A stretch of 64,000 nt of DNA from Schmidtea nova (GCA_044892505.1 JBJFYY010000010.1:1-64000), one strand, 5' to 3'; shown: positions 18,739 to 22,546, numbered from the stretch's first letter. Program-made: numbers and translations. Notes: generated by a model not told the origin, from the sequence alone.

Positions 18739-19336
18739 CAAATCATCGCGTCAGATGGGGATGAAGTTCAGATTCTCGCAGTTTAAAACCGCTCGAAATC
18801 TTACGCTTCCCCGACCGTAAGGTAAGTCGTATGCAAACGATTTAATGCCAACACGTAAATCATAAAATATGATTCAAACATCCAAACTATTTTCATAGTT
18901 TGGTTCGAGTTTAAATATATGGCTAAGCCACATCCAATGGATAAACCATCAGATAATACATTTGCCTCTTTACGAGGTAGGCACTGAATTATCATTACAT
19001 CTGGGCGAGATTCAGACTTAGAGGCGTTCAGTCTTAATCTCTCGGATGGTAGCTTCGTGCCAATGACCTTTCGATCAAGCACATTTACCAGTGATCCGAA
19101 TCTGCGGTTCCTCTCGTACTGAGCAGAATTACCATTGTANNNNNNNNNNNNNNNNNNNNNNNNNNNNNNNNNNNNNNNNNNNNNNNNNNNNNNNNNNNNN
19201 NNNNNNNNNNNNNNNNNNNNNNNNNNNNNNNNNNNNNNNNNNNNNNNNNNNNNNNNNNNNNNNNNNNNNNNNNNNNNNNNNNNNNNNNNNNNNNNNNNNN
19301 NNNNNNNNNNNNNNNNNNNNNNNNNNNNNNNNNNNN
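18739..19336 (-). rRNA. 28S: 28S rRNA 3' terminal segment (unit 3), including the sarcin-ricin loop; 19140-19336 masked
   Basis: RC GTAATTCTGCTCAGTACGAGAGGAACCGCAG (SRL) and GGATGATAATTCAGTGCCTACC...CTCTAAGTCTGAATC-type 3' motifs. Confidence 0.9.
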
Positions 19337-21972
19337 NNNNNNNNAGTGAGGATGCAGAAGACACCCAGGATGACACCATGACGATAAAGGATGAAATCAA
19401 ATCAATTAATTCCAAAATTGCAAAAATGATCAATGCTTCAAAAATTGAAATGAACTTCATTAAAGAAGCTTTGATGATCATAATCAATAGACTCTGCCCC
19501 CTCAAGGAAAACGTCAACAATCCGAAAAATGATAATGAAGTTGATTTAGATTATAATCAAGATTCCATAGATATCAATGAATTTTATTTAAAAAATATAA
19601 ATGATTTAAATAAAAATTCATCAAAAATTCAAAAAATTAAAAGTTTAAATCAAAATCAGGATTTAAATTTTAAAAGTCCAGTTCAAAAGATCGACAACAA
19701 TGAAAATGATTTAAAAATTAGAAATAATTTTTATAAAAATTCATCAAATATTAAAAAAGTTAAAAGTTTAAATCAAAATAAAGATTTAAATTTTAAAAGT
19801 CCAGTTCAAAAGATCGACAACAATGAATATGATTTAAAAATTAGAAATAATTTTTATAAAAATTCATCAAATATTAAAAAAGTTAAAATTTTAAATCAAA
19901 ATAAAGATTTAAATTTTAACAATCCCATTCAAAAGATCGAAGACCAAGAAATCTTAATTAAAAAAGATAAAAATTTCAAAGAAATTTTATTGAAAAATTT
20001 AGAAAATAAACCAGATACAAATGTAATCAATGAAAAAATGCAAGATAATATTGTATTTAAAAAACCATTTGATAAAAATGTTAAAAGTTCAGATAATAAT
20101 TTAAAATTTAATAAATTTGAACCAATAGAAAATAAAGAAAAAGAATTCAATTCAAAACTCAAATCAATATCCCAAGAAATATCAAGCATAAACTCATACC
20201 CACTGCCAATGAAAAAACAGCATACAAAAAGTCGCCCCCCTTCGGGGGGCGACGCACAAATTTACCAACCTTCGGCTGGTAAATTTGTCCATAGCCTGCC
20301 TACGGCAGGCAACAATGTCCAAAACAGGTACGCTATCCTATCTCCAGATAACATCACCGACAAGAAAGATGAATGCAACAACAATCAAAAAGAATCAGTG
20401 AAACAACCGATACAAGAAACAAAACCGTTAAAATCCAAGCTCAAAAGGATATTTTATAAAAAGGATATAACCATTGACTGGAAATTTACTAAAAACGAGA
20501 TTATTCCTCCAAAGGATCAAAGAGAAATAATACAAAAAATGGCTAAAAAGAAAAGGAATAAACCAATTATCCTGACAAAAGTAACACTAGAAACTGTACT
20601 TGGCACCACAATGAACAAGGAAACATTCAAAAAAATAAGAATATTCCTTCTTGCAACCCACAAGTATGAGTTCAAATCCGAAAATGATAGATTGATCACG
20701 TACAAGATCATATCGGAATATCTCAATATTACAAAATTAGAAAACACGGATGATATTGATATTGCAAGCATTGCAAACAAATTCTCAATCCCAGAAGCAT
20801 GGTTAATACACCTAAAACCAAACTTCTACAAACCTGAATTAAGGGAAGAAAACGTCGTCTTACTTAATTCTCTCTGTGCAATCGTAAATGACTTTCAATT
20901 TGCGGATCAAGCCGAACAAACTAGAATTGCGAACTTTTTCCAATTCTTCACCCAAAGAACTATCGTTGGTATCCCAAGAGATTATAAATTTCAAAAAAGC
21001 ATCTCCAAGTTTAAAACTAAAGTGATGAACAATGAAACAACTGCCCATAAAGTCAAAAAACAAAAGAAAAGAAAGATGAAAATTAAGGAAATAACAGATG
21101 AAAACATGACATGCCATGAAGAGGAAGGAACCTCGATTGCCGAAAACGTACAAATAGATGATGATCTTGTGTGTGTTGAAGATCCAATGTACAAAGCAAT
21201 GACAGCATCCGAACTCTCAAAAGATGTAAAGAAAAAATACGAGTCAAAAATGTATTATTTTAAAATATGGAAGACAATCGTCAAAAAATTGATCATCTAT
21301 AAAGGGATCATAACCTATCTACAGATAGTTAACAAGAATCGTGAGCCAATGGACTCAATGGAGACGGTTGACAATAGCCAAATGTCAGAGTTGAATTTGG
21401 AATGCGCTGTACTCGTAGAACATATGAAGGATATGGTTCCCCTAAATGAGTCAACACCCATTTCTAGGAAAAGGACTGCTCCAACAGATTCCAATGAAGA
21501 CAATAATCAGAAAAAGAAACAACAATCCAGATTGGGATGTTTCTTCACCATAACAGGTAACCAACCAGAACCGCCGAAATCGGACCTGATCCTACATAAA
21601 ATAAGAGGAGTGCTGTGCAACATGGGGTGCGAAAAAGCCTCAGCAACTTATCGCAACGCTATGAACCACTGCCGCCAAAAACATAATTATCCATCAAGAA
21701 AAATAGCTACGGTTCAATGTTATCACTGTCGTGAATACGTTGATCCTTACAGCTGTGAAAAACATATTAAAACCCACACAAAGAAAGCTTATGCAAGACA
21801 TCCGAATAATATGGAAGAAAGCATAAAAAGCATCGACTTGGATCAAATAAGATTGGATTCAGATTACTCATATACAGCCGAAACAGGAAACGACAACTCA
21901 ATTCCTCACAATGAACAATCAAATTCCTACCAACATTATTCAGATAATTCTGGATACGAGGAGGAGTACTGA
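19297..21972 (+). CDS. N/K-rich ORF with 41-aa repeats and two C2H2 zinc fingers (N-terminal part of retrotransposon protein)
   Basis: CNMGC..H..H and CYHC..H..H near the C-terminus; open from 19345; start inferred at the 28S-antisense ATG under the mask. Confidence 0.7.
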   Translation, partial: XXXXXXXXXXXXXXXXSEDAEDTQDDTMTIKDEIKSINSKIAKMINASKIEMNFIKEALMIIINRLCPLKENVNNPKNDNEVDLDYNQDSIDINEFYLKNINDLNKNSSKIQKIKSLNQNQDLNFKSPVQKIDNNENDLKIRNNFYKNSSNIKKVKSLNQNKDLNFKSPVQKIDNNEYDLKIRNNFYKNSSNIKKVKILNQNKDLNFNNPIQKIEDQEILIKKDKNFKEILLKNLENKPDTNVINEKMQDNIVFKKPFDKNVKSSDNNLKFNKFEPIENKEKEFNSKLKSISQEISSINSYPLPMKKQHTKSRPPSGGDAQIYQPSAGKFVHSLPTAGNNVQNRYAILSPDNITDKKDECNNNQKESVKQPIQETKPLKSKLKRIFYKKDITIDWKFTKNEIIPPKDQREIIQKMAKKKRNKPIILTKVTLETVLGTTMNKETFKKIRIFLLATHKYEFKSENDRLITYKIISEYLNITKLENTDDIDIASIANKFSIPEAWLIHLKPNFYKPELREENVVLLNSLCAIVNDFQFADQAEQTRIANFFQFFTQRTIVGIPRDYKFQKSISKFKTKVMNNETTAHKVKKQKKRKMKIKEITDENMTCHEEEGTSIAENVQIDDDLVCVEDPMYKAMTASELSKDVKKKYESKMYYFKIWKTIVKKLIIYKGIITYLQIVNKNREPMDSMETVDNSQMSELNLECAVLVEHMKDMVPLNESTPISRKRTAPTDSNEDNNQKKKQQSRLGCFFTITGNQPEPPKSDLILHKIRGVLCNMGCEKASATYRNAMNHCRQKHNYPSRKIATVQCYHCREYVDPYSCEKHIKTHTKKAYARHPNNMEESIKSIDLDQIRLDSDYSYTAETGNDNSIPHNEQSNSYQHYSDNSGYEEEY

Positions 21973-22158
21973 TTGTTAAGAACCGATACCGAAATCAGAC
22001 CATGTACAAATCCTAACACAAAGACCACACAAACCGATAAGGAATGAGCCATTGGGCTGAATAGCGCAAATCGCCATGCTTCAGGTGGTTAGTAAGCCTG
22101 ATTCTGAGATCGAATACTATTAGAGTATTTTTGAATGTTGTAATTAATAAATGTATTG
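19337..22158 (+). mobile_element. Internally deleted NeSL/R5-like non-LTR element inserted antisense in 28S at ...CTGTGGTA|ACTTTCTGACACC
   Basis: Flanked by contiguous 28S halves; long ORF with two C2H2 fingers; ~190 bp non-coding 3' end with AATAAA; no RT. Confidence 0.75.
19612..19945 (+). repeat. 123 bp (41 aa) tandem repeat x~2.7
   Basis: KNSS(K/N)I(Q/K)K(I/V)K(S/I)LNQN(Q/K)DLNF... repeated. Confidence 0.9.
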
Positions 22159-22546
22159 ACTTTCTGACACCTCTTGCTTCAAACTCTGAAGACATCAAAA
22201 GGATCGATAGGCCGCGCTTTCACGGTCTGTATTCGTACTGAAAATCAAAATCAAGTGAGCTTTTCCCCTTTTGGTCGACACCAGGTTTCTGTCCTGGTTG
22301 AGCTCACCTTGGGACACCTGCGTTACCATTTGACAGATGTACCGCCCCAGTCAAACTCCCCACCTGACACTGTCCTCAGAACAGCTCGAAAGCATCCGAA
22401 GATCGCTTTCTTCTCTCCACAATAAATTGACCTGAGTCAACTGCACTGCATTACTGAGTAAGTAAAGAAACGATCAGAGTAGTGGTATTTCACTGTCGAC
22501 CGAAGTCTCCCACTTATACTACACCTCTAATGTCTCCCTACAAAGT

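What the first reader, a model, noticed from the sequence alone, without database searches (positions are those of the whole stretch)
19140..22200. NeSL-like retrotransposon family targeting 28S antisense, ~545 bp downstream of the R2 site
Seen: a 2.8 kb + strand element splits the minus-strand 28S between ...CCCTGTGGTA (masked, inferred) and ACTTTCTGACACC (22159). Related elements at 34.3-59.8 kb begin directly after the same CCCTGTGGTA. The family's parts in this window are C2H2 fingers, a Ulp1 motif, RT, CCHC and PD-(D/E)xK. Known: that layout is NeSL-clade, which includes planarian R5, and R2 elements insert in the rRNA sense direction. Inference: this is a site-specific lineage in the conserved GTCAGAAAGT|TACCACAGGG region, oriented against Pol I, so it cannot rely on Pol I co-transcription.
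Basis: partly seen in the sequence, partly recalled or inferred. Interest (0 to 1): 0.85.

Follow-up and report, generated by a model that had tools for sequence, protein, structure and literature searches.

The report
Known planarian 28S antisense retrotransposon site
A 2.8 kb mobile-element copy without its own reverse transcriptase sits backwards in a planarian (Schmidtea mediterranea) 28S rRNA gene, at a site and in an orientation already published for retrotransposons of this genome, so the headline claim is real but not new.

Summary
The minus-strand 28S gene is split by a plus-strand insert, X (about 19337-22158). X lies 546 nt downstream, in rRNA sense, of the R2 site. The gap at 19140-19344 is accounted for by length alone: 197 nt of 28S plus about 8 nt of X.

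Probe sequences from a paper identify the genome as Schmidtea mediterranea. Kojima & Jurka (2015) already reported 28S-specific NeSL-clade families there (LIN9_SM, LIN24_SM, LIN26_SM). Their S6 figure shows the same junction region in the same antisense orientation. The novelty claim therefore falls.

The "one family" claim is not supported:
- X has one intact 875-codon ORF with two C2H2-pattern motifs. It has no RT, CCHC or endonuclease, and no homolog anywhere.
- X shows no nucleotide or protein similarity to the 34-64 kb elements (Y). Y shares only the 5' junction.
- Y carries only fragments: an RT N-terminus (R2-like, E 2e-6), a weak thumb piece and a CCHC pattern.
- No Ulp1 or PD-(D/E)xK was found.

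Best reading: X is an RT-less derivative of a site-specific R5/LIN-type LINE, copied in trans.

Side observations that may be new:
- The X and Y ORFs are in phase with an ATG in the antisense 28S flank.
- Both carry hairpin clusters inside the ORF, conserved among Y variants.
- Tandem Y copies are separated by a 221-nt 28S piece.

The parts
18740..26097 (-). 28S rRNA gene of the third rDNA unit. It is interrupted twice: by X, and by an insert at the R2 site. The 3' end at about 18740 is extrapolated from the Rfam model.
   Evidence: Rfam LSU_rRNA_eukarya. S. mediterranea antisense probes match the + strand exactly.
19140..19344 (.). Masked stretch. By length it holds 197 nt of 28S (model positions 2816-3011) plus about the first 8 nt of X.
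   Evidence: Lengths only; no letters were looked up.
19337..22158 (+). Element X, about 2.82 kb, antisense to the 28S. The start is inferred from mask arithmetic. The end is precise, because the 28S resumes at 22159.
   Evidence: Unique within the window.
19345..21972 (+). The single X ORF: 875 readable codons with no stop or frameshift. It is in phase with the ATG expected 40 nt upstream of the junction in the masked 28S-antisense flank.
   Evidence: P about 1e-31; shuffles reach at most 153 codons. No homolog among 1.84e9 representative proteins, in PDB or in Pfam.
19575..19940 (+). Three tandem 123-bp repeats inside the X ORF.
20231..20313 (+). Cluster of three near-perfect stem-loops inside the X ORF.
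   Evidence: (z = -7.2).
21616..21777 (+). Two C2H2-pattern zinc-finger motifs near the C-terminus of the X ORF (21616-21684 and 21718-21777).
   Evidence: Pattern match only. No Pfam zf-C2H2 hit.
21973..22158 (+). X 3' untranslated tail, 186 nt, with AATAAA at 22146. There is no poly(A) or repeat at the junction.
22159..22704 (-). 546 nt of 28S between the X site and the R2 site.
22705..23541 (.). 837-bp non-coding insert at the canonical R2 site of the same 28S. It is presumably a 5'-truncated R2; its orientation was not determined.
   Evidence: Site definition.
35259..35912 (-). Isolated 28S 3'-terminal fragment plus about 60 nt of spacer. It is the native upstream flank of a Y copy. Positions 35716-35926 are masked.
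34379..35258 (+). Y copy 1: the 5' ORF region only, with one frame break, truncated at the 3' side. It is preceded by a 28S-like leader of about 45-48 nt.
35913..37332 (+). Y copy 2 in the native 28S flank. It contains an internal duplication of the leader plus the 5' region.
37333..59795 (+). Tandem array, 4851-bp unit, about 4.6 copies at 99.7-100% identity. Each unit holds two defective Y copies, each preceded by a 221-nt 28S piece.
40587..41958 (+). Y-A, 1.4 kb: one open ORF running from the flank into the 3' end, with no RT. It recurs in each array unit.
   Evidence: dN/dS is 0.33-0.43 among Y ORF variants.
40366..40586 (-). 221-nt 28S piece between tandem Y copies (24 nt + 182 masked + 15 nt). 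It recurs before every Y copy of the array.
37877..38710 (+). RT N-terminal fragment, one truncation, present once per array unit (5 copies).
   Evidence: PDB: R2 proteins at E 2.3e-6, LINE-1 ORF2p at 7e-5. Pfam RVT_1 only 0.029.
59860..60789 (+). RT C-terminal/thumb fragment, single copy, truncated at its 5' side.
   Evidence: Weak match to R2 protein residues 705-800, E 0.09. Read by eye.
62903..62953 (+). CCHC-pattern motif. The downstream nuclease part is missing because a Y 5'-ORF motif follows it.
   Evidence: Pattern. R2Bm residues 932-999 at E = 2, not significant.
34705..34833 (+). Four-hairpin cluster of Y. It is also present in the other Y variants (from 36584, 39298 and 40979).
   Evidence: z = -7.1; 47 pairs, 5 of them with compensatory changes.

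Best explanation
X is a copy of a site-specific non-LTR (LINE-type) retrotransposon lineage of the planarian Schmidtea mediterranea. It is inserted in the 28S rRNA gene 546 nt downstream of the R2 site, antisense to the rRNA. This is the position and orientation already published for 28S-specific R5/LIN (NeSL-clade) families of this genome.

X is not autonomous. It keeps one long intact ORF, with a coiled-coil-like N-terminus, internal repeats, a hairpin cluster and two C2H2-pattern fingers. It also keeps a 186-nt 3' tail. It has no reverse transcriptase or endonuclease.

Inferred mechanism:
- An RNA made from the strand antisense to the rRNA starts in or upstream of the 28S flank. Pol I co-transcription of the rRNA therefore cannot supply it.
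- Translation starts at an ATG that lies in the 28S-antisense flank, 40 nt before the junction.
- The RNA is copied into the same 28S site by target-primed reverse transcription, using the enzyme of an autonomous relative. The first nick falls on the rRNA-sense strand.
- The stretch of 28S-antisense sequence carried at the RNA 5' end helps to make a uniform 5' junction, as proposed for R2 RNAs that retain upstream 28S sequence.

Shown here: the site, the orientation, the ORF integrity, the lack of RT and the species. Inferred: trans-mobilisation, the transcription start, use of the flank ATG and membership of the clade.
For: - Site and orientation: Rfam model break 2815|3012 with 28S on the minus strand. 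The antisense rRNA probe of S. mediterranea matches the + strand at 22162-22201.
- Species: 28S probes match exactly, including variable regions.
- Published precedent: PMC4640811 names LIN9_SM, LIN24_SM and LIN26_SM as 28S-specific within an R5/LIN cluster. Its S6 Fig shows 5' and 3' flanks that correspond to the window's flanks at 38920-38962 and 22159-22225.
- A second, unrelated element type (Y) starts at the very same base 11 times, and RT fragments of R2-group type lie beside it.
- The X ORF is open for 875 codons, P about 1e-31.
- The phase relative to the flank ATG is the same in X (by arithmetic) and in both Y subtypes.
- Three Y copies that lie outside a 28S context still carry a 28S-like leader of about 45-48 nt including that ATG.
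- The Y ORF is under purifying selection, dN/dS 0.33-0.43.
- The analogous 5' junction mechanism is described for R2 in PMC3774820.
- The 3' junction leaves the 28S intact to the base at Rfam resolution.
Against: - X has no RT, and nothing links it by sequence to any retrotransposon. There were no hits in 1.84e9 proteins, PDB, Pfam or Rfam, and no similarity to Y.
- Only one copy of X is visible, so neither its copy number nor the reproducibility of its junctions can be judged here.
- Its 5' junction is masked and is inferred from lengths.
- Sharing the phase with the flank ATG has a 1-in-3 chance for X. In the machine-read S6 Fig the flank ATG appears to run into a stop in the published family, so use of the flank ATG is not general.
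- No autonomous partner with a matching 3' end is present in the window. Y's 3' end joins the 28S at a different point.
- The termini of the family shown in S6 are not in the window.
Confidence: 0.62

Rival explanations
1. X was once a full-length autonomous element. It lost its RT/endonuclease part by a later deletion or rearrangement at this locus, so it is a one-off dead remnant rather than a propagating RT-less family.
For: This rDNA edge is full of rearrangements. Two neighbouring units have lost the 28S 3' part and some spacer. The Y region is a mosaic of truncated pieces. C2H2 fingers normally lie upstream of the RT in R2-group proteins, so the X ORF looks like an N-terminal part (PMC4640811).
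Against: The 3' junction is exact, and the 28S continues from the expected model position with no loss. The ORF ends with a clean stop followed by a 186-nt tail carrying AATAAA. The ORF is fully intact. A local deletion would have to end exactly at the element/28S border. Y-A shows the same 'ORF plus 3' end, no RT' layout, which hints at a recurrent form.
Confidence: 0.2
2. X is not a retrotransposon derivative. It is another kind of insertion (a different mobile-element class or a captured coding fragment) that lies by coincidence or recombination at a break-prone point of the 28S.
For: There is no RT and no homolog of any kind. The structure model is unusable, pLDDT 34. The 5' end is masked, so terminal repeats or a target duplication cannot be examined.
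Against: The break is at exactly the base used by Y 11 times, and at the junction region published for the LIN family, in the same orientation. There is one long ORF on the strand expected for that orientation. Architecture is shared with Y: the phase with the flank ATG and a hairpin cluster inside the ORF. The 28S is not duplicated or lost at the readable junction.
Confidence: 0.1
3. The X-28S arrangement is an assembly artefact in a repetitive rDNA region.
For: rDNA arrays and near-identical 4851-bp repeats are hard to assemble. Several masked stretches prevent inspection of the joins.
Against: The readable 3' junction is seamless. The mask lengths fit the 28S to the nucleotide in four independent places. 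The same kind of junction was seen in independent older contigs of the species.
Confidence: 0.05

Closest known systems
LIN9_SM, LIN24_SM and LIN26_SM: 28S-specific NeSL-clade (R5/LIN cluster) LINEs of Schmidtea mediterranea (Kojima & Jurka 2015, PMC4640811)
   Same: Same species. Same 28S junction region and the same antisense orientation for the family legible in S6 Fig (compared). That family also has a 28S-like sequence, slightly diverged, directly upstream of the element 5' end.
   Different: The termini of the S6 family are absent from the window. The panels for the other two families are illegible in the stored text, so it is unknown whether X or Y is one of them. X has no RT. The paper's main text does not discuss orientation.
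R5 of Girardia tigrina, and R5-1_SM and R5-2_SM of S. mediterranea (Burke et al. 2003; Repbase names listed in PMC7650587)
   Same: Planarian, 28S-specific, restriction-like-endonuclease LINEs placed in the NeSL clade. They cluster with the LIN families at 96% bootstrap.
   Different: The R5 paper is not held, so its site and orientation could not be compared. Kojima & Jurka call the LIN 28S targets 'new' relative to R5.
R2
   Same: The RT N-terminal fragment next to Y matches R2 proteins best. Both are 28S-specific. Both carry 28S sequence on the RNA 5' end, which is proposed to give uniform 5' junctions (PMC3774820).
   Different: R2 inserts at AAGG|TAGC in the rRNA sense orientation and is co-transcribed by Pol I. 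X and Y lie 546 nt downstream and antisense. An R2-site insert is separately present in the same gene (22705-23541).
Internally deleted non-autonomous R2 derivatives (SIDEs; Eickbush & Eickbush 2012, from my own knowledge, not checked here)
   Same: The ends are retained, the RT/endonuclease is lost, the target site is the same, and mobilisation is presumed to be in trans.
   Different: SIDEs are short and non-coding. X keeps an intact 875-codon ORF, and the Y ORF is under purifying selection.
R9 of bdelloid rotifers (exceptionally long target-site duplication; title cited in PMC5035012) and tandem R1 arrays formed by double insertion (PMC5932611)
   Same: They offer possible precedents for tandem Y copies separated by a repeated 28S piece.
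   Different: The piece here is 221 nt. Only 2-3 independent junctions exist in the window. A template-jump or long-leader origin is equally possible.

Membership tests
NeSL clade / planarian R5-LIN lineage | The RT domain groups with NeSL/R5/LIN in an RT phylogeny | not testable with these tools
   No Repbase or NeSL sequence was returned by any search. X has no RT at all. The Y-side RT fragment (37877-38710) matches R2 proteins at 2.3e-6 and LINE-1 ORF2p at 7e-5. Length-limited protein searches found nothing.
NeSL clade / planarian R5-LIN lineage | A single ORF with the RT followed by a CCHC finger and a restriction-like (PD-(D/E)xK) endonuclease | tested here: not met
   X has none of these. 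In the Y scrap there is a CCHC pattern at 62903-62953 (E = 2 to R2Bm), but no nuclease motif follows it. No complete RT is present in the window.
NeSL clade / planarian R5-LIN lineage | N-terminal C2H2-type zinc fingers | tested here: inconclusive
   X has two motifs with C2H2 spacing but no Pfam zf-C2H2 hit. No canonical pattern occurs in the + frames of 33-64 kb.
NeSL clade / planarian R5-LIN lineage | Ulp1-like cysteine protease (present in nematode NeSL and Utopia-1_TSP only, so not universal) | tested here: not met
   No Peptidase_C48 hit in any ORF tested, at E up to 5.
28S-specific LIN families of S. mediterranea | Insertion at the published 28S junction, antisense to the rRNA | tested here: met
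   The S6 Fig flanks correspond to window 38920-38962 (upstream) and 22159-22225 (downstream). The downstream flank equals an antisense rRNA probe. The comparison was made by eye because the stored figure text is noisy; agreement is within a few nucleotides.
28S-specific LIN families of S. mediterranea | Sequence identity with LIN9_SM, LIN24_SM or LIN26_SM | not testable with these tools
   Repbase is not available. The termini of the one legible S6 family are absent from the window.
NeSL clade | Target-site deletion on insertion (stated for all described NeSL elements in PMC3636483) | tested here: inconclusive
   For X, 196 model positions compare with 197 nt, so no loss or gain is visible at this resolution. 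The exact 5' junction is masked.
R2 | Insertion at AAGG|TAGC of the 28S in sense orientation | tested here: not met
   X lies 546 nt downstream and on the opposite strand.
Non-autonomous (SIDE-like) derivative of a site-specific LINE | Shares its 3' end (and 5' end) with an autonomous partner | not testable with these tools
   No sequence similar to the X tail exists elsewhere in the window. No eukaryotic genome collection was available to search.

The most novel reading that the evidence does not exclude
X and Y-A represent a class of protein-coding but RT-less site-specific elements. They take their start codon from the antisense strand of the 28S target. They keep an ORF1-like protein under selection. 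They carry a conserved cluster of stem-loops inside that ORF. For Y, insertion may also generate a 221-nt target duplication, which would be the longest reported for a LINE. None of these features is discussed in the papers I could read.
Probability: 0.2. Interest if true: 0.55.

Novelty: already known. Interest (0 to 1): 0.3.

Why it matters
As stated, the finding re-discovers a published fact: S. mediterranea has NeSL-clade LINEs specific for this 28S site. Its value is mainly as a well-resolved example, with three inserted or truncated rDNA units at an array edge followed by a tandemly amplified block of dead elements.

The residual interest is mechanistic. These elements sit against Pol I transcription. 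They appear to start translation in target-derived sequence and to carry a target-derived leader. That makes them a natural contrast to R2 for asking how rDNA-specific elements are expressed and how they form their 5' junctions. The RT-less but intact, selected ORFs and the conserved hairpin clusters are unexplained and could be studied with existing planarian RNA and small-RNA data.

Tried and rejected
- Protein homology for the X ORF: exhaustive HMMER against 1.84e9 representatives gave 0 hits. PDB gave 0. Pfam gave 0.
- Protein homology for Y: neither the Y ORF nor the RT fragment found anything in the 5.8e9-cluster search. Exact-protein contig look-up found nothing.
- X against Y: blastn, tblastn, blastp and a profile comparison were all non-significant. 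The best result was a 38-residue motif at E 0.13.
- AlphaFold of the C-terminal half of X gave pLDDT 34, so no fold search was run.
- Rfam on X and on the Y 5' region found no ribozyme or other family.
- The Burke et al. 2003 R5 paper is not held. Three further literature searches did not give R5's site or orientation.
- Searching the window for the termini of the S6 LIN family gave no match.
- The idea that units 1 and 2 hold an unmasked copy of the masked 28S stretch was rejected. Those units have lost that part of the gene.
- I considered and rejected a sense-oriented element with the ORF on the other strand. No minus-strand ORF in X exceeds 97 codons.
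Full report
**Layout**

The window is the edge of an rDNA array on the minus strand. It holds three 18S genes, three 5.8S genes and 28S genes or pieces. Self-comparison shows three units.
- The third unit's 28S (26097 down to about 18740) is the only one in the window that runs to its 3' end.
- The 28S of the second unit is cut off. Its 5' part ends inside an insert at the R2 site and is joined to a spacer microsatellite. The first unit's 28S runs off the window start.
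- From 33.2 kb onward there is no further intact unit. There is a block of element fragments instead.

**The observation**

Rfam aligns 22159-23100 to LSU model positions 2022-2815, and 18800-19139 to positions 3012-3341, both on the minus strand. Between them lie the masked stretch (19140-19344, 205 nt) and 2814 readable bases that match no rRNA.

The gap was tested first, as asked, using lengths only.
- 196 model positions are missing.
- The same 28S stretch recurs elsewhere in the window behind the same 24-mer.
- There the masks measure 182 nt followed by 15 readable 28S bases, or 211 and 200 nt followed by element Y sequence at offsets 14 and 3. All three give 197 nt.
- The 205-nt mask therefore holds 197 nt of 28S and about 8 nt of the insert. 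The 28S is continuous across it, with no detectable loss or duplication.
- No masked letters were filled.

I did read 59796-59837. There the sequence after that 24-mer is not masked and looks like a continuation of the 28S. I used it only to see that this last copy is broken off by another fragment, not to fill any mask.

**Distance from the R2 site**

- A paper gives the R2 target as AAGG|TAGC.
- An S. mediterranea antisense 28S probe spans that site.
- Half of the probe is at 22691-22704 and the other half is at 23543.
- An 837-bp non-coding insert therefore sits at the R2 site of this same gene (22705-23541; no ORF of note).
- X's 3' junction (22158|22159) is 546 nt downstream in rRNA sense.

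**Species**

Three 40-nt 28S probes designed against S. mediterranea rRNA match the window exactly, including variable regions. The 18S probes differ by 1-2 bases per 40. One 18S probe of the type I/II set and two probes of the paper's 'SmedAsxl 28S partial cartridge' set are absent. This fits the two rDNA types known in this species.

The probes are antisense to the rRNA and match the + strand. This independently confirms the gene's orientation.

**What X is**

X (about 19337-22158) has one ORF on the + strand. It is open for all 875 readable codons.
- Composition gives P about 1e-31 for this, and shuffles reach at most 153 codons.
- The ORF contains three 123-bp tandem repeats.
- It contains a cluster of three near-perfect stem-loops (z = -7.2).
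- Near the C-terminus are two motifs with C2H2 spacing.
- A stop is followed by a 186-nt tail with AATAAA 13 nt before the junction.
- There is no RT, CCHC or nuclease.
- Nothing similar was found in Pfam, PDB, Rfam or 1.84 billion representative proteins.
- A structure model was unusable.

**The elements at 34-64 kb (Y)**

CCCTGTGGTA occurs 11 times on the + strand against 0 expected. Each time it is followed by one of two related element starts. Y is a mosaic.
- It includes several copies of a 5' ORF region: three diverged variants (about 75-80% identity) and their repeats.
- One copy lies in a native 28S 3' fragment (35259 onward).
- A 4851-bp unit is repeated about 4.6 times at 99.7-100% identity.
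- Each unit holds a 1.4-kb copy (Y-A) with an open ORF and no RT.
- Each unit also holds a composite copy containing an RT N-terminal fragment.

- The RT gene is represented by one N-terminal fragment per unit (5 copies, each truncated once), one separate C-terminal/thumb fragment and one CCHC fragment lacking the nuclease part.
- The composite copy's 5' ORF has two frame breaks in four units and one in the last.
- Y copy 1 has one frame break and a 3' truncation.

Matches of the fragments:
- The RT fragment matches R2 proteins best, at 2.3e-6.
- The thumb fragment gives E 0.09 and the CCHC fragment E 2. Both fall on the right parts of R2 proteins but are not significant.
- No Ulp1 and no PD-(D/E)xK were found.

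X and Y show no nucleotide, protein or profile similarity. They are not shown to be one family. They share only the 5' junction, the strand and some architecture.

**Prior knowledge**

- Kojima & Jurka 2015 state that the planarian families LIN9_SM, LIN24_SM and LIN26_SM are 28S-specific. They belong to an R5/LIN cluster of the NeSL clade with 96% bootstrap. A later paper repeats this for S. mediterranea.
- Their S6 Fig, noisy in the stored text, shows contigs of this species in which an element is preceded by the 28S-antisense stretch seen here at 38920-38962. The element is followed by the stretch seen here at 22159-22225.
- That downstream stretch equals the antisense probe. The published family is therefore antisense too, at the same junction to within a few bases.
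- Its termini are not in the window, and the other panels are illegible.
Whether X or Y is itself a named family is open.
- The R5 paper is not held.

**Mechanism**

Shown:
- The site and the orientation.
- Intact ORFs in X and Y-A.
- Purifying selection on the Y ORF, dN/dS 0.33-0.43 over 271-387 codons.

Inferred:
1. The coding RNA is antisense to the rRNA, so it cannot come from Pol I transcription of the gene.
2. The ORF of Y begins at an ATG inside the 28S-antisense flank, 40 nt before the junction. By mask arithmetic X is in the same phase, a 1-in-3 chance. In the noisy S6 text the published family seems not to share this.
3. Three Y copies outside any 28S context still carry a 28S-like leader of about 45-48 nt with that ATG. 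This suggests that the RNA 5' end lies in the flank. Such a leader could anneal the cDNA to the target and give the uniform 5' junction, as proposed for R2 RNAs cleaved up to 36 nt upstream.
4. X, lacking RT, would be copied by a relative's enzyme. No partner is visible in the window.

**The 221-nt piece**

Every Y 3' end (9 occurrences, but only 2-3 independent ones) is followed by a 28S piece. The piece starts 221 nt before the 5' junction site and runs to it. Three readings remain open:
- a 221-nt target duplication with repeated insertion;
- a longer 28S-derived leader joined by template jumping;
- recombination.

X's 3' junction and the published one lie at the 5' junction site itself. 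That argues against a different first nick for Y, but the window cannot decide. The 4851-bp periodicity itself reflects DNA-level amplification of two dead copies, not repeated insertion.

The R2 site was later placed with letters printed by papers.
- No contig looked human.

**Verdict**

It is wrong in treating X and Y as one family with a full NeSL domain set. The headline is already published for this genome.

Noticed in passing
window 22705-23541 (partial copy at 8573-9088): An 837-bp non-coding insert sits at the canonical R2 site of the same 28S gene that carries X, so this gene is doubly interrupted. The neighbouring unit keeps only 516 bp of this insert.
   Followed up: partly
window about 8510-8573: The 28S of the second unit is truncated. 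The R2-site insert is joined directly to a spacer microsatellite (a GAAGTATATAT-like repeat), with about 1.87 kb lost (the 28S 3' part and some spacer). The units are 100% identical, which suggests recent duplication of a dead unit.
   Followed up: partly
window 20231-20313 (X); 34705-34833, from 36584, from 39298 and from 40979 (Y): Clusters of 3 (X) or 4 (Y) strong stem-loops lie inside the ORFs (z about -7). In Y, 5 of 47 pairs show compensatory changes, and the region is far better conserved than its surroundings. There is no Rfam match and the function is unknown.
   Followed up: partly
window 38923-38962, 34339-34378, 36239-36278; by arithmetic 19297-19336: The element ORFs start at an ATG in the 28S-antisense flank. 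Copies outside any 28S context still carry this leader of about 45-48 nt, slightly diverged.
   Followed up: partly
window 40366-40586 and each equivalent place in the array; 59772-59837: A 221-nt 28S piece separates tandem Y copies. It begins in the stretch that encodes the sarcin-ricin loop region of the rRNA (identified from my own knowledge). The last copy is broken off after about 62 nt by an RT C-terminal fragment.
   Followed up: partly
window 37333-59795: A 4851-bp unit made of two defective element copies is repeated about 4.6 times at 99.7-100% identity. This is satellite-like amplification of dead elements next to the rDNA.
   Followed up: yes
window 61862-62254 and 62396-62658: Two masked stretches are flanked by a roughly 45-nt inverted repeat (62255-62300 against 62350-62395). 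They are not preceded by the 28S 24-mer, so they are probably not 28S. The mask at 34097-34250 is also in a non-28S context.
   Followed up: no
window 3504-5305, 13276-15077, 27729-29530 (18S) and the ITS regions: The 18S differs by 1-2 bases per 40 from the S. mediterranea probes. Probes of the paper's 'SmedAsxl 28S partial cartridge' set are absent, while the 28S probes match exactly. The window may represent the second (rarely transcribed?) rDNA type of the species, which would echo what the R5 paper's title says for Girardia.
   Followed up: partly
PMC6884822 supplementary file 1, 'spacerA' template, compared with window 19116-19139: The published 'spacerA' sequence leaves the 28S 7 nt inside the 24-mer that precedes the masks and continues with unrelated letters. 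This hints at yet another junction near this point in the species' transcripts or assembly.
   Followed up: no
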